Shown piece by piece: positions 24,595-34,458 of a stretch of 64,000 nt of DNA. The notes beneath the pieces are model-generated. The model saw nothing but the letters and a program-made list of their open reading frames with translations, did no database searches and was not told the DNA's origin. The translations under genes and the position numbers were made by a program. The stretch spans positions 62,001-126,000 of the IMG/VR virus record IMGVR_UViG_3300012988_000001. One strand, given 5' to 3'. Within the stretch, counting starts at the first letter, position 1. The number at the start of each line of letters is the position of its first letter.

Positions 24595-24965
24595 CAGATA
24601 TTCAGAAATTAGTACAAGTACTGAACAATATGCCTAAACTGGAGCAGGATGGAGATCGTCGTCGTTTTCGCGTCATCGCACGTGCTCTGGATAAAAAAGG
24701 ACGTGTATTAGCTACTCGTACTAATTCCTATACCATGTCACATCCAGTACAGAAACACTTCGCTGTTCTGGCTGGGCGTCCTGAAGCAATCTTTGTACAC
24801 GCTGAAATCGCCACTCTAATCGCTTGTAAGGCTGCAAATAAAAATGTGCACACTTTGTTGATTGCACGTGTTAATACCGCTGGTGAGCCGATTAAGGCCG
24901 CTCCTTGCGAGATTTGCAGCATAGCTATCCAGAAGTTTGGCGTTAAAGAAATCATTCATACATAA
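24591..24965 (+). CDS. zinc-dependent deaminase (CDA/dCMP/TadA superfamily)
   Basis: HAEIA and APCEIC zinc motifs. Confidence 0.85.
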   Translation: MTDIQKLVQVLNNMPKLEQDGDRRRFRVIARALDKKGRVLATRTNSYTMSHPVQKHFAVLAGRPEAIFVHAEIATLIACKAANKNVHTLLIARVNTAGEPIKAAPCEICSIAIQKFGVKEIIHT

Positions 24966-24975
24966 GGAATCTACA

Positions 24976-26214
24976 ATGAATAATGCACTAGCAGAACTAA
25001 TCAATCGTGGTTTAATCAAACAGAGTACAGATATTGCTGTACTGGACAAGATGATGAATGAGAACAAAGCTATCTATTGTGGCTTCGATCCTACTGCTGA
25101 TTCCCTACACGTTGGCTCTCTTCTGCCTCTTACAGTGATGAAGGTTCTACGTAAGCATGGTGTCCGGGTAATCGCCCTTGTTGGTGGTGCAACTGGTCGT
25201 ATTGGCGATCCTAGCTTCAAAGCTCAGGAACGTAACATGCTGGATGAAAGTACAGTTGAACGTAATATTGAAGGTATTACTAAGGTAATCCATCAAGTAC
25301 TCGGTGACGATGTTAAAGTAGTGAACAACTACAACTGGGTCAAGGATATCTCTATGCTTGAGTTCCTACGTGTGTACGGCAAGTGCTTTACTGTGAATAA
25401 CATGGTAAACAAAGAGTCAGTACGCCAACGTATCGAACGTCCAGATCAGGGTATCTCTTTCACTGAATTCTCTTACCCAATCCTACAGGGTCTTGATTTT
25501 GAACATCTGTTCGAAATGCACGACTGTACCATGCAAATGGGCGGTTCTGACCAATGGGGCAATATGGTAGCTGGTATGGAAGTAATTCATAAGCTACAGG
25601 GTAATGACAAAGAATGTGGTGTCTTTACTCTTCCATTACTAACCAAAGACGATGGAACCAAGTTTGGTAAGTCTGAAAGTGGTGCAGTATGGTTGAGTGC
25701 TGATAAGACTTCCCCATTCGAAATGTTCCAGTTCTGGAAGAATCTTACTGACGCAGAGACTGTTAAAATGTTCCAGTACTTCAAACCTCTTGGTGGCTCA
25801 GTTGAAGACTTTGAAGTACGTATGAATAACAATCCAACTAAAGTGAAGACTATGTTTGCTTTGAGTATGGTCGAGTTGATTCATGGTGAACGTACCGCTT
25901 GTGACGTAATGGATCTCGCATACGCACTATTTGAAGGTAAGTTTAGCTTTGAAACTGATGAACTAGAAAAATTCATCGGTGCTGGGCTTGAAGAGTGTGA
26001 ATGGACTACTAACCTAGTTGAAACGCTAGTTAGTTCTGGTCTAGCTACTTCACGTAAGATGGCACGTGAGTTCATCAAAAACAATGCAGTAAAAGTAAAT
26101 GGCGAAGTCGTTGGTGAAGATTTCGATGTAGAGTCTATCTTGGCTATTCCATCTGAACTATTCCTACTCCAGCGTGGTCGCAAGAATTTTGTGGTAATCC
26201 GCATAGGAGAGTAA
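24976..26214 (+). CDS. tyrS: tyrosyl-tRNA synthetase
   Basis: YCGFDPTADSLHVGS (HIGH), GRIGDPS, QMGGSDQWGN, KFGKS (KMSKS), C-terminal S4 domain SRKMAREFIKNNAVKVNG. Confidence 0.97.
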   Translation: MNNALAELINRGLIKQSTDIAVLDKMMNENKAIYCGFDPTADSLHVGSLLPLTVMKVLRKHGVRVIALVGGATGRIGDPSFKAQERNMLDESTVERNIEGITKVIHQVLGDDVKVVNNYNWVKDISMLEFLRVYGKCFTVNNMVNKESVRQRIERPDQGISFTEFSYPILQGLDFEHLFEMHDCTMQMGGSDQWGNMVAGMEVIHKLQGNDKECGVFTLPLLTKDDGTKFGKSESGAVWLSADKTSPFEMFQFWKNLTDAETVKMFQYFKPLGGSVEDFEVRMNNNPTKVKTMFALSMVELIHGERTACDVMDLAYALFEGKFSFETDELEKFIGAGLEECEWTTNLVETLVSSGLATSRKMAREFIKNNAVKVNGEVVGEDFDVESILAIPSELFLLQRGRKNFVVIRIGE

Positions 26215-29260: not shown

Positions 29261-29285
29261 AAAAGCACCCATCGGGTGCTTTTTG
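29261..29285 (+). terminator. intrinsic terminator
   Basis: AAAAGCACCC-ATC-GGGTGCTTTTT. Confidence 0.88.
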
Positions 29286-29318
29286 TGTTTCTAATGCATT
29301 GAAATATGTGACATTTTA

Positions 29319-29332
29319 TTGATCTAGGTCAA
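29319..29332. promoter_or_regulatory. FNR box upstream of nrdDG
   Basis: TTGAT-CTAG-GTCAA, 9/10 to TTGAT-N4-ATCAA, abutting the -35 element. Confidence 0.7.
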
Positions 29333-29361
29333 GGGACAAAACGGGTTTTGGGTGATATAAT
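29333..29361 (+). promoter_or_regulatory. GGGACA-class promoter (copy 3), nrdDG
   Basis: GGGACA-17-TATAAT with TG extension. Confidence 0.8.
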
Positions 29362-29408
29362 AATGGGGTACTATCTAAATAAATCACCACAATGACACGG
29401 AGAGTCTA

Positions 29409-31217
29409 ATGAAAAAAGATAATTTATACAATGACGTAACTAGTTTTTTAAATCAAAGCAACCAAGATTTGCTAAATGAAAACGCCAATAAAGATGCAAA
29501 GATAGTCAACACACACCGAGATTTATTAGCTGGTATCCTTTCCAAACACTATGCTGAAGAAGTTATTGCAGAAGATTTAATGCAATGGCATAATGATGGA
29601 TATGGACATATTCATGATCTAGATTACTATATTAGTCCATTAACCAACTGCTGTTTAGTTAATTATGAAGATATGTTAGCTAACGGTTTTAAAATTGGTA
29701 ACGCACAAGTTGGTTCCCCAAATAGTATTGGCGTGGCAAGTACAATACTAACACAAATAGTACTAGCAGTTTCAGCATCACAATACGGTGGTCAATCCCT
29801 ACCACACATTGATCGTGGTTTGGAACCATATGTAGAGAAATCCTATCAAAAACTATTACAACAACAAAAAGAATTTAATCTTAGCGATGAGTATGTTGAG
29901 TATGCATTACGTAAAGAAGTTTATGATGCAATGCAAGCGTTGTTGTATCAAGTGAATACAATCACATCAAGTAATGGGCAAACACCATTCGTCACTATTA
30001 GCTTAGGATTGAGTACTTCTAAGTTCGGTAAAATGATTACTGAATCATACTTGGATGTTCATGAAAAAGGATTAGGAATAGACGGTGCTACACCCGTATT
30101 TCCTAAAGTTGTGTTCTTCCTTCAGGAAGGTATCAATATGAGTACTGAAGATTGTAACTACGATTTAAAACAAAAAGCACTACAATGTGCAGCTAAACGT
30201 ATATATCCCGACTTTGTTTCAGTTCCATTAAACTTGAAAGTAACCAAGAGTACTTCAGAAGCTGTTACTCCTATGGGTTGCCGATCCTTCCTATCCAACT
30301 GGGTTGATGAGAATGGTTCGGAACGTTACAACGGACGCTTTAACTTAGGAGTGGTGAGTATCAATCTTCCATTATTAGCCCTTGAATCGACCTCTGACGG
30401 AGATTTCTTTGCTAAGGTAGACCAGCATATGCAAATGGCATATCGTGCTCAGATGAACCGTGTAGAGCGTTTAAAGAGCATGAAAGCGAAGCAGAACCCT
30501 ATTCTTTTCACTGAAGGAGTTCTTGCACGTTTAGACCCAGAAGATACTATAGAACAGCTATTTTACGATGGGTATGCAAGTATTAGTATTGGATTTGTAG
30601 GTTTAGCAGAATGTTCAGAAATACTCAAAGGTAATGTTGATAAAACGTTCTGTAAGTCTATTCTATCATATATGAAATCTAAGTGTGAAGATTTCAGAGT
30701 GAAGAGTAGATTATCCTTTAGTTTATATGGAACACCAGCAGAGAGTCTTTGCTACAAGTTTGCACGTTCAATTGAGAAGAAATACCCTTCAGTACTAAAA
30801 CGTGATTATATCACTAACTCATTCCACCAGCCAGTATGGATTGAAAGTTCTCCACTAGAGAAATGGAATTATGAAGAAGGTTTTGCATTCTTGAGTAATG
30901 GTGGAAATATTAGTTATGTTGAGACACCAAACCTTAAAAATAATATAGCAGCCTTAGAAGCATTGGTCAATTATGCATATGAACGTGTACCGTACTTTGG
31001 TATTAACCAACCAGTAGATAAATGTTATGAATGTAATTTCGAAGGTGAGTTTGCTGTAGATCGTGATGGTTTCCATTGCCCTAACTGCAATAATAGAAAT
31101 GATAAATCAATGTCGGTTATCCGTAGAGTATCTGGTTATCTTGGAAACCCAACTTCCAGAGGATTTAACAAGGGCAAACAACAAGAATGTGTTGAAAGGA
31201 CAAAACATACAAAATGA
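29409..31217 (+). CDS. nrdD: anaerobic (class III) ribonucleotide reductase, no N-terminal ATP cone
   Basis: HIHDLDY, TNCCL, GQTPF, FPKVVF, TPMGCRS, NLGVVSINL, YGTPAESL, CYEC/CPNC, RRVSGYL glycyl-radical motif. Confidence 0.97.
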   Translation: MKKDNLYNDVTSFLNQSNQDLLNENANKDAKIVNTHRDLLAGILSKHYAEEVIAEDLMQWHNDGYGHIHDLDYYISPLTNCCLVNYEDMLANGFKIGNAQVGSPNSIGVASTILTQIVLAVSASQYGGQSLPHIDRGLEPYVEKSYQKLLQQQKEFNLSDEYVEYALRKEVYDAMQALLYQVNTITSSNGQTPFVTISLGLSTSKFGKMITESYLDVHEKGLGIDGATPVFPKVVFFLQEGINMSTEDCNYDLKQKALQCAAKRIYPDFVSVPLNLKVTKSTSEAVTPMGCRSFLSNWVDENGSERYNGRFNLGVVSINLPLLALESTSDGDFFAKVDQHMQMAYRAQMNRVERLKSMKAKQNPILFTEGVLARLDPEDTIEQLFYDGYASISIGFVGLAECSEILKGNVDKTFCKSILSYMKSKCEDFRVKSRLSFSLYGTPAESLCYKFARSIEKKYPSVLKRDYITNSFHQPVWIESSPLEKWNYEEGFAFLSNGGNISYVETPNLKNNIAALEALVNYAYERVPYFGINQPVDKCYECNFEGEFAVDRDGFHCPNCNNRNDKSMSVIRRVSGYLGNPTSRGFNKGKQQECVERTKHTK

Positions 31218-31684
31218 ATTACCAAACAATAATTAAAGATGATTTAGTTAACGGGGAGGGCATACGTTGCTCTCTTTTTGTTTCTGGTTGTAGTCACGGT
31301 TGCGTTGGATGTTTCAATGAAAGTGCATGGGACTATAGATCAGGTTCAGAATATACCAAAGAAACTGAACAAATAATTCTAAATGAATTAAACAAGAAGT
31401 ACGTAAGTGGATTAACTTTATTAGGTGGAGATCCACTAATGAAGAAAAATATAGATGTAGTACTTAACCTTTGTAGAACAGTTAAAGAAAAATATCCAGA
31501 TAAGAATATTTGGTGTTGGACCGGATACACATTAGACGAAGTTCAATCAAATCATGCGAAAGACATATTGAAATACGTTGATGTATTAGTGGATGGGAAA
31601 TTTGAAGAGTCCCAAAAAGATTTAACATTACCGCATCGTGGTTCCCGAAACCAGAGAGTACTCAAACGTGGAATAGACTACTAA
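31214..31684 (+). CDS. nrdG: anaerobic RNR activating enzyme
   Basis: NGEGIRCSLFVSGCSHGCVGC (CxxxCxxC), LGGDPL, VLVDGKF, RGSRNQR. Confidence 0.97.
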   Translation: MNYQTIIKDDLVNGEGIRCSLFVSGCSHGCVGCFNESAWDYRSGSEYTKETEQIILNELNKKYVSGLTLLGGDPLMKKNIDVVLNLCRTVKEKYPDKNIWCWTGYTLDEVQSNHAKDILKYVDVLVDGKFEESQKDLTLPHRGSRNQRVLKRGIDY

Positions 31685-31705
31685 GCACCCTATGGGTGCT
31701 TTTTT
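31683..31705 (+). terminator. intrinsic terminator of nrdDG
   Basis: AAGCACCC-TAT-GGGTGCTTTTTT. Confidence 0.88.
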
Positions 31706-31752: not shown

Positions 31753-34458
31753 ATGACTAAAAAGATATATGGCGGGATGGATGTTAAAAACAATCTAACC
31801 GCACAGGGTAACCGTACAGTACAAAGTATTGACGGAACAGCACTATTCGATAGTAATGGTAATATGTTACTTGATGGTTACACTCAACAAGAAATTAATG
31901 AAATCGTGGGGGTTCTCCCACTATCACACTATGGTACACATAACTATCTCCCTGCTGGTGTAAGTGGTGATTTCGTTGGTGCATCAGAAAACCCAAATTA
32001 CAGAAGAGTAAAAAACTTCATTGAAGATGATGGTACTTTTGTAGCATTACGTTCTGGGTCTAATGGTTCTACTATTGGACTATATTATTCGTACTTAACT
32101 GATATATTGAATAAAACCAATATTAGTACAACATCTGTCAATACAAATAAACAATATGCACCCGGATTTATCCCATCAGGAAGAAAAGTAGTTTCATGTG
32201 TTAGTACTGATGACAAAGTTTTATGCGGTCGAGTTACACTAGCAAACTCAGAAACTGTAGATAATTCTTTATTTTACACTTCCATGATGAATGGTACATT
32301 GGATGATTCACAACATACTGGTTTTATGATCAATGCAAGCACTGTACTTCCTGATGGTGGAGAACTAATTTATTGTATGCGTTTAAATGATGGCTCAATA
32401 TTGTATTTTGGATTGATTTCAGATGCAACACATTTTGATCTATCATTAGTTCAAGTAGTTTTCAATCAAAGTGCTGGTACATTTACGTCATCAAGAATAA
32501 CTGGTTTTAACGGATCGGTTTTCTATCCAATGACAAATACGAATAATATTAAAATTGCAGGTACTCGTTTAAGCTCGACCACTGCCGCACAACCATACCT
32601 TCTAACGGACCCGGCATTAGTTTCTGCTGAACCATTTATGGTTACGTATGATGTATTTGCAGTACAAGATACATCTGGTTCAATTCGTGTTCGTATAAAC
32701 GGAGACTGTTATGTTGCAACAACAACAGATAACATACGTCCACAACATGGATTTAGTTTTGTATTCAATCCAACTTCTAAAGTTGTTGCTTTGGATTCTG
32801 GATATGCACCAAGTGGGGCAGCACCAATGGTGTGTACTGTAACTTCAGGTGTACCTACGGTTACTGGAAATGTAATAACAACGGATGCATTTTATATTCA
32901 CCAAAGTACTGGTAATATCGGATGTGCATATTATTATACCAACTTGAATACCGCAATTTGCGTATATACTCGTAATTTACAATTACCACCAATTATTCAA
33001 ATTTGTAGATATAATACAAATATAACACCGTATCAAATGCAAAACTTTAAGCAATACACTGCCAATATTGAATCTGTCCAGACTGGCCTTTTAATTCAAT
33101 CTTTTGGGTCTATTATTGGTTCATATATTACCGGTACTGAATTGTTAACAAATACTAGTACTAAACAACTTTCAACTCAGGCCGATGGTAATATTGCAAA
33201 TAGTTATGCAATACATGGTTCTGCACCAACATTCTCATTCAAATCGGTAGATTTAGGAACAGTAAATGGATATCAACCAACAGTTCAACGTGCAGAGATA
33301 CCAAATAATAATTCATACAAAATGTTTATGACAACTGTTGATGGTTCAACTGTAACAGCAAATGGTGGCATTTTCGTTCAAGGTGTGCGTGAAAGTACTG
33401 CATTAACTTACAATGCTCAAGGTGGTGGAACTGGAACTATTACAGTTGATTCAACAGCATTGTTGAATTTCAAAAATTCCGAAGTTGCAAAGATGACATT
33501 TACAACTATATCACCAACAGCAAGTAAAGATTGTACATTATACGTACCTAGACAAAGTGACATGCCAGCGTTTGCTATCATAAGTACAGTAAACACCTCA
33601 TTACAATACGTTTATCGTTTAGTTGAAGTTAGTGTTAACACTAGAACTGGCAACATTACTACTATTACGTTTAATAGATTAGTACAGGAAGATGTTCGAA
33701 ATGCTAATCACTATGCTAATGTTCAGGCTAGTATTAGAAATTCTAGTACAGGTGTTACAATTTATAATGGTGGAACATTCTATTTTGTTGCTGGTGCAGA
33801 TCCAATGGTACGCCAAACAATCGGTAATGATTTAGGATTTTATTTCCGAGGTATTGTTAACAAAACCACTTCACAGTTTACACGTCTAGATGTTGATTAT
33901 ACATATACATCATATTCATCATCGTTGCAGCCGTTTGCATTACCGGGACAAGGTTTCGGAATATTACAGCAACAGGATTTAGCATGTAAGATGGTTTTCC
34001 GTTCGTATGGTACTACGATTGCTGATTATGATGCATGGACGGCGGTTGGTTCTCCAATCAACTTAGTATCTCAAGATGTTGCTGAAGGATTCATTGTTTA
34101 TTTCACAGAACCAACTCCAGTTATGTTAAGTGGTAAATCATTTACATTACCAGTTACTAGTATAGATTTAACAACTGTCACTGCATCCCCAGCTAATAAA
34201 ACATTTTATGTTTATGTACAAATGGTACAAGGTATTGCACGTTATACTATTAGTGAATCTGTAATTGCTGAAACTGGGACAACTGCATATAATCTATTCT
34301 GGATTGGAACAATACAAACCAATGCAACACAGATTACAAATATTAATGTACTAAAACGTTCAAGACTTGATATATTTGGTGAATCGTTAACTGCTGCGGG
34401 ATCATCATTCCCAGTAAGTTATGGAACACCAGCAGGTACTGGAACAATTAGTTGGTAA
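31753..34458 (+). CDS. putative tail fibre/baseplate structural protein (901 aa)
   Basis: T/S/N/G-rich beta-strand composition; N- and C-termini paralogous to the next two genes. Confidence 0.75.
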   Translation: MTKKIYGGMDVKNNLTAQGNRTVQSIDGTALFDSNGNMLLDGYTQQEINEIVGVLPLSHYGTHNYLPAGVSGDFVGASENPNYRRVKNFIEDDGTFVALRSGSNGSTIGLYYSYLTDILNKTNISTTSVNTNKQYAPGFIPSGRKVVSCVSTDDKVLCGRVTLANSETVDNSLFYTSMMNGTLDDSQHTGFMINASTVLPDGGELIYCMRLNDGSILYFGLISDATHFDLSLVQVVFNQSAGTFTSSRITGFNGSVFYPMTNTNNIKIAGTRLSSTTAAQPYLLTDPALVSAEPFMVTYDVFAVQDTSGSIRVRINGDCYVATTTDNIRPQHGFSFVFNPTSKVVALDSGYAPSGAAPMVCTVTSGVPTVTGNVITTDAFYIHQSTGNIGCAYYYTNLNTAICVYTRNLQLPPIIQICRYNTNITPYQMQNFKQYTANIESVQTGLLIQSFGSIIGSYITGTELLTNTSTKQLSTQADGNIANSYAIHGSAPTFSFKSVDLGTVNGYQPTVQRAEIPNNNSYKMFMTTVDGSTVTANGGIFVQGVRESTALTYNAQGGGTGTITVDSTALLNFKNSEVAKMTFTTISPTASKDCTLYVPRQSDMPAFAIISTVNTSLQYVYRLVEVSVNTRTGNITTITFNRLVQEDVRNANHYANVQASIRNSSTGVTIYNGGTFYFVAGADPMVRQTIGNDLGFYFRGIVNKTTSQFTRLDVDYTYTSYSSSLQPFALPGQGFGILQQQDLACKMVFRSYGTTIADYDAWTAVGSPINLVSQDVAEGFIVYFTEPTPVMLSGKSFTLPVTSIDLTTVTASPANKTFYVYVQMVQGIARYTISESVIAETGTTAYNLFWIGTIQTNATQITNINVLKRSRLDIFGESLTAAGSSFPVSYGTPAGTGTISW

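What the first reader, a model, noticed from the sequence alone, without database searches (positions are those of the whole stretch)
29300..29408. Host FNR box in class II position over the phage nrdDG promoter
Seen: TTGATCTAGGTCAA (29319-29332) matches the FNR consensus TTGAT-N4-ATCAA at 9 of 10 positions and directly abuts the -35 hexamer; its centre lies about 42 nt upstream of the predicted start site, the class II activation position (-41.5). Established: enterobacterial nrdDG is FNR-activated. Inference: the phage wires its anaerobic dNTP supply to the host oxygen sensor. A TGTGA half-site at 29307 may add CRP/FNR input.
Basis: partly seen in the sequence, partly recalled or inferred. 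Interest (0 to 1): 0.62.

Follow-up and report, generated by a model that had tools for sequence, protein, structure and literature searches.

The report
Host FNR site before phage nrdDG
A 366-kb jumbo phage of enterobacteria carries, just upstream of its oxygen-sensitive (anaerobic) ribonucleotide reductase genes, a near-perfect binding site for the host oxygen sensor FNR that is kept in every relative examined, so the phage very probably lets the host's own sensor switch on its anaerobic DNA-precursor supply.

Summary
TTGATCTAGGTCAA lies at 29319-29332 and directly abuts a GGGACA/17 nt/TGaTATAAT promoter, 77 nt before nrdD (29409) and nrdG. A 9-of-10 match alone is not beyond chance: the window has 11 such sites against 6.4 expected. 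Two things make it significant.

- **Context:** it is the only such site in a promoter context in the whole 366-kb phage.
- **Conservation:** it is present, mostly as a perfect TTGAT-N4-ATCAA, before nrdD in all 20 Rak2/121Q/Munch-like jumbo phages compared. The half-sites are invariant, the N4 spacer varies, and the flanks are scrambled.

The phage encodes no Crp/FNR-family protein, so host FNR is the likely binder. The geometry fits class II (centre -41.5/-42.5) for the sigma70-type promoter. The box also lies exactly 43 nt from a conserved T4-late-like TAAATA promoter motif in all 20 phages, which is a class I-like geometry (about -62).

It is not a copy of the E. coli nrdDG promoter, because it has no second FNR site and no NrdR boxes. 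The TGTGA/CRP idea is not supported. No transcript or binding data exist. I found no published description of this site.

The parts
29261..29283 (+). Rho-independent terminator that closes the upstream operon and insulates nrdDG
   Evidence: 10-bp stem, 5 G-C pairs, T-run. A terminator sits at the same place in relatives.
29307..29311 (+).
   Evidence: One search confirms its presence. There is no TCACA partner 6 nt away. It is not conserved in Munch, fENko-Kae01, L022 or L031.
29319..29332 (.). FNR-type palindrome TTGATCTAGGTCAA (9 of 10 to TTGAT-N4-ATCAA)
   Evidence: It is conserved in 20 of 20 jumbo relatives. Half-site information content is 1.92 bits against 0.74-0.84 bits in the flanks. 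N4 varies: CTAG, ATAG, TTAG, TTAA, CCAG, TTAT.
29333..29338 (+). -35-type hexamer GGGACA of the phage's recurrent promoter class
   Evidence: About 25 promoters in the genome share cTT-GGGACA-aa/17 nt/TGTGATATAAT. At nrdD the usual A-tract plus cTT is replaced by the box.
29353..29361 (+). Extended -10 TGaTATAAT of promoter P1; predicted +1 at G29367/G29368
   Evidence: A TATAAT sits 22 or 23 nt after the box in the window group, the 121Q group, the RaK2 group, Hallingskeid and EJP2.
29375..29384 (+). CTAAATAAAT: T4-late-like promoter motif (P2), 34 nt before the ATG; TAAATA is 29376-29381
   Evidence: [ACT]TAAATA occurs 60 times upstream of ORFs against 8 expected, peaking 30-40 nt before starts. 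A gp55-like late sigma is encoded at G000:C1:183251-184087. The motif lies exactly 43 nt after the box in 20 of 20 relatives.
29399..29404 (+). Ribosome-binding site GGAGAG
   Evidence: It lies 4 nt before the ATG and is conserved as GGAGAG/GGAGCG/GGAGTG in most relatives.
29409..31217 (+). nrdD, class III (anaerobic) ribonucleotide reductase, 602 aa
   Evidence: PF13597 E 1e-163 and Gly_radical E 7e-23. It is 89% identical to the fENko-Kae01 NrdD.
31214..31684 (+). nrdG, radical-SAM activase, 156 aa; its start overlaps the nrdD stop
   Evidence: Fer4_12 E 2e-54 and Radical_SAM.
31683..31701 (+). Terminator closing the nrdDG unit, with the same AAGCACCC...GGGTGCTT stem as the upstream one

Best explanation
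The palindrome is a binding site for the host's FNR. nrdDG is an insulated two-gene unit between two terminators.

In anoxic host cells, dimeric [4Fe-4S]-FNR binds TTGATCTAGGTCAA and helps host RNA polymerase start transcription of nrdDG. In oxic cells FNR is monomeric and absent from the site, and the oxygen-labile enzyme is made less.

In this window the box abuts the -35-type hexamer of a sigma70-type, extended -10 promoter (P1). The centre is at -41.5/-42.5, which is class II geometry. The same box lies about 62 bp upstream of the start expected from a T4-late-like TAAATA promoter (P2), which is class I-like geometry. It may therefore serve both promoters.

Shown: the sequence, the context, clade-wide conservation of box and spacing, uniqueness in the genome, and absence of a phage Crp/FNR protein. 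Inferred: FNR binding, activation, both start sites, and oxygen dependence.
For: 1. The box and promoter elements are at the stated coordinates.
2. All 20 jumbo relatives carry the box before nrdD. They include Asterius-, Alcyoneus-, Mimas- and Eneladusvirus, Munch-like phages, Hallingskeid, EJP2 and IMG/VR contigs. TTGAT is invariant on the left and [AG]TCAA on the right, and there are six different N4 spacers. This is the pattern expected for FNR recognition. Flanks are only 26-49% identical between major lineages.
3. A -10 hexamer sits 22-23 nt after the box: a perfect TATAAT in five lineage groups, TATTAT/TATTTT in most Mimas/Eneladus phages.
4. It is the only convincing FNR-type site in a promoter context in 366 kb.
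5. No Crp/FNR-family gene was found in the phage (PF13545 and PF00027 gave no match at E <= 1, and the controls were positive).
6. Host nrdDG is FNR-activated.
7. phAPEC8-like coliphages, whose NrdD is the nearest outside the jumbo clade, have a terminator, a 9-of-10 box, then a -10 at 21-22 nt.
8. The aerobic nrdAB operon of the same phage has only a terminator plus CTAAATAC and no box.
9. The related phage PA5oct depends on host RNA polymerase throughout infection.
Against: - There are no binding, start-site or expression data. No RNA reads were found.
- P1 has a consensus extended -10 and the same -35-type element as about 25 other phage promoters. It may therefore fire without FNR, so the FNR effect could be small in this lineage.
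- With the usual 7-nt distance from the -10, the centre is -42.5, 1 bp off the classical -41.5.
- In Yen9-03 and L030 no usable -10 exists at 22-23 nt although the box is perfect. Class II therefore cannot be the whole story.
- The GGGACA promoter class might need a phage factor, since a sigma70-like phage sigma is reported for CBB.
- One relative, XbC2, is recorded on Xanthomonas, whose use of an FNR of this specificity was not examined.
Confidence: 0.75

Rival explanations
1. FNR binds the box, but its conserved target is the TAAATA (gp55-type, late-like) promoter P2. FNR sits at about -62 and recruits polymerase through the alpha C-terminal domain, as a class I activator. The sigma70-type P1 is a lineage-specific addition.
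For: - The distance from box to TAAATA is exactly 43 nt in 20 of 20 phages. The filler is near-random between lineages, and TAAATA-to-ATG varies from 25 to 40 nt with nine lengths.
- The -10 of P1 shifts between 22 and 23 nt and is lost in Yen9-03 and L030, yet box and TAAATA stay.
- In E. coli nrdDG the necessary and sufficient FNR site is upstream at -64.5, and it lies 44 nt from the hexamer TAAAAT that I take as its -10.
- TAAATA motifs behave as promoters genome-wide, and a gp55-like sigma is present.
- The nrdD copy of the motif never has the preferred A before TAAATA.
Against: - The distance from terminator to box is also nearly constant (39-41 nt, but 29 in Hallingskeid). The region is therefore generally poor in indels.
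- No activator of class I type is known for gp55-type promoters.
- The start site of TAAATA promoters in this clade is unmapped.
- Five lineage groups keep a perfect TATAAT at the class II distance.
Confidence: 0.3
2. The palindrome is the operator of another protein, either an unrecognised phage-encoded regulator or another host factor. Its likeness to the FNR consensus is coincidental.
For: - Most genes of the phage have no assigned function. For example, five of the nine neighbouring ORFs scanned have no Pfam match.
- A transcriptional regulator and extra sigma factors are reported in relatives.
Against: - The consensus is matched 10 of 10 in most lineages, with variation confined to N4. 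It has TTGA/TCAA rather than CRP's GTGA/TCAC.
- It occurs once per genome, and before the one operon whose host counterpart is FNR-controlled.
- No Crp/FNR-family protein is encoded.
Confidence: 0.08
3. FNR binds but does not activate. P1 is constitutive, and the bound FNR is neutral or damps transcription, or the box is a relic of the cassette's origin.
For: - P1 has consensus extended -10 elements, like about 25 apparently unregulated phage promoters.
- In the Vibrio phages pVp-1 and Thalassa a perfect box overlaps the -35 and spacer of a promoter upstream of nrdD. That is a repression-type position.
Against: - A relic would not stay perfect while the flanks scramble.
- Repressing an anaerobic enzyme in anoxia makes no physiological sense.
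- The position matches activating geometries for both promoters.
Confidence: 0.07
4. It is a chance match without function.
For: Matches of 9 of 10 are common: 11 in the window against 6.4 expected, and 48 in the genome.
Against: The position and half-sites are conserved in 13 lineages with diverged flanks.
Confidence: 0.02

Closest known systems
E. coli / Salmonella nrdDG promoter (FNR sites at -64.5 and -33.5, two NrdR boxes)
   Same: The same operon type (class III RNR plus activase) is placed under an FNR palindrome. In E. coli the essential upstream site TTGAGCTACATCAA lies 44 nt from the hexamer TAAAAT that I take as the -10; in the phage the box lies 43 nt from TAAATA.
   Different: The phage has a single consensus-grade site. 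There is no second FNR site 31 bp downstream. No NrdR box scores above background (best 0.7 bits against 13-18 for real boxes). The flanks are unrelated, and a sigma70-type promoter sits at the class II distance. It is not a copied host promoter.
Canonical class II FNR-dependent promoters (site centred at -41.5)
   Same: The palindrome overlaps or abuts the -35 region and lies 22-23 nt before a -10 hexamer. That a centre near -41.5 is the standard class II position is from my own knowledge.
   Different: The start site is only predicted. In this lineage the centre may be -42.5. The core promoter has an extended -10 plus a conserved phage-specific -35-type element, so dependence on the activator is uncertain.
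Host-regulator boxes before auxiliary metabolic genes of lytic phages (cyanophage pho boxes before pstS)
   Same: A virulent phage places a host global regulator's site before a host-like metabolic gene, so expression follows host physiology (PMC10976474, found; otherwise my own knowledge).
   Different: The signal is oxygen, the regulator is FNR, and the gene is nrdDG. The hosts are Enterobacterales. I found no description of this in the searched literature.
nrdD of T4-like, T5-like, rV5-like and FelixO1-like coliphages
   Same: They carry homologous NrdD/NrdG (31-62% identity).
   Different: In those phages nrdD sits inside operons without its own intergenic promoter or FNR box. The best upstream matches have at least 2 mismatches and lie in coding DNA. 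phAPEC8-like phages are the exception, with 9-of-10 boxes.
T4 late promoters (TATAAATA, gp55)
   Same: A [AC]TAAATA motif is enriched 30-40 nt before gene starts, and a gp55-like sigma is encoded. Similar motifs have been predicted for CBB and GAP32.
   Different: Here one such motif sits at a fixed distance from a host activator site. No gp33 or gp45 homologues are reported for the clade.

Membership tests
FNR (Crp/FNR-family) DNA site | Inverted repeat TTGAT-N4-ATCAA | tested here: met
   The window matches 9 of 10. Fourteen of the 20 relatives match 10 of 10, and the rest have only A-to-G at position 10.
FNR (Crp/FNR-family) DNA site | TTGA/TCAA core rather than CRP's GTGA/TCAC, with a 4-nt rather than 6-nt gap between the pentamers | tested here: met
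   TTGA and TCAA are invariant in all 20 sequences.
FNR (Crp/FNR-family) DNA site | Contact positions conserved, spacer free to vary | tested here: met
   Half-sites carry 1.92 bits, the spacer 1.40 bits with six variants, and the flanks 0.74-0.84 bits.
FNR (Crp/FNR-family) DNA site | Bound by holo-FNR; expression depends on fnr and anoxia | not testable with these tools
   No binding or expression data exist, and no RNA reads were found.
Class II activator-dependent promoter | Site centred near -41.5 relative to a mapped start | tested here: inconclusive
   The centre is -41.5/-42.5 relative to the predicted +1 at 29367/29368. The -10 is 23 nt after the box here and 22 nt in four other lineage groups. 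The start is not mapped.
Class II activator-dependent promoter | Core promoter too weak to work alone | tested here: not met
   The core is TGaTATAAT plus GGGACA at 17 nt, the same elements as about 25 other phage promoters. What is missing is the usual upstream A-tract and cTT. In the 121Q, EJP2 and Mimas lineages the -35 is poor.
Host nrdDG promoter architecture | Tandem FNR sites 31 bp apart | tested here: not met
   The 14-mer centred 31 bp downstream (29350-29363) matches only 4 of 10 (read). The E. coli layout is given.
Host nrdDG promoter architecture | Pair of 16-bp NrdR boxes with a 15-bp linker | tested here: not met
   A matrix built from six E. coli boxes (oligos in PMC12176259) gives a best score of 0.7 bits in 29261-29408. 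Real boxes score 13.4-17.8.
CRP site | TGTGA-N6-TCACA | tested here: not met
   Only the left pentamer is present (29307-29311). The partner position reads ATTGA. The pentamer is not conserved.
T4-type late promoter | TATAAATA-like -10 element used with a gp55-family sigma | tested here: inconclusive
   CTAAATAA lies 34 nt before the ATG. The motif is 7-fold enriched upstream of genes, and a gp55-like sigma is encoded (phrog_12791, E 7e-148). Starts are not mapped.

The most novel reading that the evidence does not exclude
The host regulator FNR acts as a class I-type activator of a phage late-type (gp55-sigma, TAAATA) promoter. The box is held exactly 43 nt from TAAATA in every lineage so that FNR at about -62 recruits gp55-loaded host polymerase through its alpha subunit. 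This would be an oxygen-conditional late promoter in a clade that lacks the T4 clamp and co-activator system.
Probability: 0.25. Interest if true: 0.8.

Novelty: new member of a known kind. Interest (0 to 1): 0.6.

Why it matters
It would be a clear case of a virulent enterobacterial phage reading the host's oxygen status through the host's own sensor, to decide when to make an oxygen-labile enzyme. The wiring is conserved across a whole clade of roughly 350-kb phages that infect Salmonella, Klebsiella, E. coli, Erwinia, Serratia, Yersinia, Pectobacterium and Cronobacter.

It gives a simple, testable handle on how jumbo phages adapt dNTP supply to gut, soil or plant-tissue anoxia. That is relevant to phage therapy and biocontrol under low oxygen.

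It also shows that host-regulator boxes before phage metabolic genes are not confined to cyanophages. The fixed spacing to a late-type promoter motif raises the further question of whether host activators can work on phage-sigma holoenzymes.

Tried and rejected
- **CRP/TGTGA input.** Rejected: there is no second half-site and the pentamer is not conserved.
- **NrdR co-regulation, as in host nrdDG.** No NrdR-like box was found in the window promoter. The ACCCC-N7-GGGGT palindrome of Mimas/Eneladus phages scores only 8.2 bits and has no partner box.
- **Phage-encoded Crp/FNR protein.** None was found.
- **Copy of the E. coli promoter.** Rejected.
- **Minus-strand promoter using TTGACC of the box.** The match is 9 of 12 with CATATT, and no leftward gene exists. 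Rejected as chance.
- **Transcript evidence.** One search for sequencing runs and one laying of reads were used (2,901 letters, within the operators' limit). Two raw poly-A RNA runs gave 0 reads. The two metagenome runs are contigs and cannot show starts. Close variants show no change between 29274 and 29860.
- **IMG/VR pattern scan for box-N43-TAAATA.** Only 1 of 115 loci carried nrdD, and that one was already known. Uninformative.
- **Other FNR-controlled promoters in the phage.** None was convincing at up to 2 mismatches.
- **Literature.** Four searches found no description of an FNR site at a phage nrdD. No transcriptome of an enterobacterial Rak2-like phage was found.
- **Not used or not met.** The costly protein searches, folds and complex prediction were not needed.

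Full report
**What the window is.**
The window is bases 62001-126000 of a 366,160-bp virus record with direct terminal repeats. Its nearest named relatives, at about 81-86% nucleotide identity around the site, are the roughly 350-kb jumbo myoviruses Salmonella phage Munch, 7t3, SE_PL and PHA46, and Klebsiella phage fENko-Kae01. More distant relatives are the 121Q/PBECO4, RaK2/K64-1, GAP32/CBB and BF/Yen9-04 groups. The same DNA occurs in soil, plant and wastewater data sets.

**Check of the observation.**
- TTGATCTAGGTCAA lies at 29319-29332 and matches TTGAT-N4-ATCAA at 9 of 10 positions.
- It is followed directly by GGGACA (29333-29338), 17 nt, and TGATATAAT (29353-29361). This is the best sigma70-type match in the region.
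- A terminator (29261-29283) lies 36 nt upstream.
- nrdD (29409-31217; PF13597, E 1e-163) and nrdG (31214-31684; Fer4_12/Radical SAM) follow. A second terminator with the same stem closes the unit at 31683-31701.
- With +1 at G29367 or G29368 the box centre is at -41.5 or -42.5.

The coordinates and the stated geometry are therefore correct. The match alone is not beyond chance: the window has 11 sites with at most 1 mismatch against 6.4 +/- 2.7 expected, and the genome has 48 against 31 for a reversed control. Of the 48, only this one lies in a real intergenic promoter context. Scans that require a -10 or a TAAATA motif at the right distance find nothing else at 1 mismatch and nothing convincing at 2.

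**Comparative evidence.**
I compared the nrdD upstream region of 20 jumbo phages in about 13 lineages: 15 from GenBank records and 5 from IMG/VR contigs. Every one carries the palindrome 81-96 nt before the ATG.
- Fourteen of the 20 relatives match perfectly.
- The left half is always TTGAT and the right half always ATCAA or GTCAA.
- The four spacer bases take six forms: CTAG, ATAG, TTAG, TTAA, CCAG and TTAT.
- Anchored on the box, the half-sites carry 1.92 bits per position. The 35 nt upstream carry 0.74 bits and the 22 nt downstream 0.84 bits.
- Between major lineages the 43 nt after the box are only 26-49% identical.

Invariant contact bases with a free spacer are what recognition by a Crp/FNR-type dimer predicts. 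TTGA/TCAA is the FNR rather than the CRP core. The phage has no detectable Crp/FNR-family gene, so host FNR is the obvious binder. Host nrdDG is FNR-activated, with sites at -64.5 and -33.5, the upstream one being necessary and sufficient (Roca et al. 2008 as summarised in PMC10425943 and PMC2892513).

**Two promoters, two geometries.**

*P1.* The GGGACA/17 nt/TGaTATAAT promoter is one of about 25 near-identical promoters in this genome, of the form aaaa-cTT-GGGACA-aa ... aTGTGATATAAT. At nrdD, the usual A-rich tract and cTT just upstream of GGGACA are replaced by the box. A perfect TATAAT lies 23 nt after the box in the window group. It lies 22 nt after the box in the 121Q group, the RaK2 group, Hallingskeid and EJP2. 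Mimas/Eneladus phages have TATTAT or TATTTT at 23 nt, but Yen9-03 (TTGAAT) and L030 (TTTTTT) have nothing usable. This fits class II FNR activation. However, the strong extended -10 here argues that P1 need not depend on an activator, and class II cannot explain the lineages that lack a -10.

*P2.* The most enriched words upstream of genes in this phage are CTAAATAA, ATAAATAA and TATAAATA. [ACT]TAAATA occurs 60 times in the 100 nt before ORFs against 8 expected, with a peak 30-40 nt before the start. This resembles the T4 late promoter, as already predicted for CBB and GAP32 (PMC5259590). The phage encodes a gp55-like late sigma. nrdD has CTAAATAAAT at 29375-29384, 34 nt before the ATG. The aerobic nrdAB operon of the same phage has a terminator plus CTAAATAC and no box.

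The distance from the end of the box to TAAATA is exactly 43 nt in all 20 phages. In contrast, TAAATA-to-ATG takes nine different lengths, from 25 to 40 nt. If TAAATA occupies the -10 position (PMC7892883), the box centre lies at about -62 +/- 1, which is a class I geometry. This is close to the host arrangement, where the -64.5 site lies 44 nt before the hexamer TAAAAT that I take as the -10. The weight of this observation is tempered because the terminator-to-box distance is also nearly constant, at 39-41 nt and 29 nt in Hallingskeid. I therefore regard FNR control as well supported, and the choice of promoter (P1, P2 or both) as open.

**What it is not.**
- It is not a copy of the E. coli nrdDG promoter. 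No second FNR site lies 31 bp away. A matrix built from the six E. coli NrdR boxes (oligos in PMC12176259) scores at most 0.7 bits in the window promoter, against 13-18 for true boxes.
- The TGTGA pentamer has no partner and is not conserved, so the CRP idea is dropped.

**Spread among phages.**
- rV5-like (PVP-SE1, JES2013), T4-like (moskry, RB49), T5-like (SA001) and FelixO1-like (ESh19) coliphages have nrdD inside operons without a box.
- Of 80 IMG/VR nrdD loci fetched with a profile, all 12 jumbo loci have the box.
- phAPEC8-like coliphages, the nearest NrdD relatives outside the clade, have a terminator, a 9-of-10 box, then a -10 at 21-22 nt.
- Vibrio phages pVp-1 and Thalassa have a perfect box overlapping the -35 of an upstream promoter.
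- Two further contigs with perfect boxes (L211, L215) have an nrdD closest to chromosomal Salmonella nrdD and may be host DNA.

**Limits.**
No transcript, start-site or binding evidence could be obtained. Two raw RNA runs gave no reads, and the other runs are contigs. The searches found no paper describing an FNR site before a phage nrdD, and no transcriptome of an enterobacterial Rak2-like phage. The related PA5oct depends on host polymerase throughout infection, which makes control by host activators plausible.

**Verdict.**
The FNR reading is strongly supported by comparative evidence (confidence 0.75). The class II assignment is plausible but is one of two geometries, and the CRP side idea is rejected. 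By kind, this is a new member of a known class: host global-regulator boxes before phage auxiliary metabolic genes, such as cyanophage pho boxes (PMC10976474). The fixed spacing to a late-type promoter is the unusual part.

Noticed in passing
window 7940, 18450, 29353, 45635 and about 20 more in G000: The phage has about 25 near-identical promoters of the form aaaa-cTT-GGGACA-aa/17 nt/aTGTGATATAAT. A few canonical TTGAC[AT]-17-TATAAT promoters, embedded in hairpins, lie near the genome ends. The conserved cTTGGGACA suggests a phage-specific recognition element.
   Followed up: partly
genome-wide; window examples at 34-38 nt before the ORF starts at 29409, 31753 and 47315, and 22 nt before 43439: A T4-late-like [AC]TAAATA motif occurs 60 times upstream of ORFs against 8 expected, mostly 30-40 nt before the start codon. 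It also precedes the aerobic nrdA. A gp55-like sigma is encoded at G000:C1:183251-184087.
   Followed up: partly
window 29261-29283 and 31683-31701: The nrdDG unit is bracketed by two terminators with the same stem (AAGCACCC ... GGGTGCTT), as if it were a mobile cassette.
   Followed up: no
L015-L019, L021, L026, L029, L030, between box and -10: Mimas/Eneladus relatives keep a palindrome ACCCC-N7-GGGGT 8 nt after the box. In CBB it reads CCCCTGTATATGGGGT, which is 13 of 16 identical to E. coli nrdAB NrdR box 1. It scores about 8 bits on an NrdR matrix and has no partner box.
   Followed up: partly
L015-L019, L021, L026, L029, 13-30 nt upstream of the box: A second conserved element, AAACGTT[AG]A[CT]C-AAGT, lies upstream of the box in the Mimas/Eneladus lineages. 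Its function is unknown.
   Followed up: no
L003, L010, L012-L014, about 25-35 nt upstream of the box: A palindrome TTTGT[AG]CAAA follows the terminator in the 121Q and RaK2 lineages. The window has GTGTTTCTAA there instead.
   Followed up: no
window 24937-26214: The phage encodes a tyrosyl-tRNA synthetase-like protein (tRNA-synt_1b E 1e-65, plus the SYY C-terminal and S4 domains).
   Followed up: no
G000:C1:236216-236229 (inside nrdB): A 9-of-10 FNR-like site, ATGATCTAGATCAA, lies within the coding region of the aerobic nrdB. It is probably chance. Conservation was not checked.
   Followed up: no
G000:C1:237600-237615: The best NrdR-matrix hit in the genome (ATCCTATATGTTGTAT, 15.4 bits, as high as real E. 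coli boxes) lies about 730 nt downstream of nrdB, inside an ORF. It is a single box.
   Followed up: no
L200 (Vibrio phage pVp-1) and L205 (Thalassa-like), about 366-372 nt before nrdD: Perfect FNR palindromes (TTGATATAGATCAA, TTGATCTGGATCAA) have a left half that doubles as the -35 (TTGATA/TTGATC) of a TATAAT promoter. The centre is about -28.5, a repression-type position.
   Followed up: partly
L172 (phiWec179-like) and L243 (phAPEC8): phAPEC8-like coliphages have a terminator, then a 9-of-10 FNR-like box (TTGATCCTGAACAA, TTGATTTTCCTCAA), then a -10 (TAAAAT, TAGAAT) 21-22 nt later, before nrdD.
   Followed up: partly
window 29326-29329 in run X8: Two wastewater contigs end at 29326 and 29329, inside the box. 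This may reflect a polymorphism or the palindrome breaking the assembly. In the same variants the terminator loop differs (29271-29273, ATC to GAT).
   Followed up: no
window 31753-34458: The 901-aa ORF after nrdG has no Pfam match. It has its own ATAAATAT motif 38 nt before the start.
   Followed up: no
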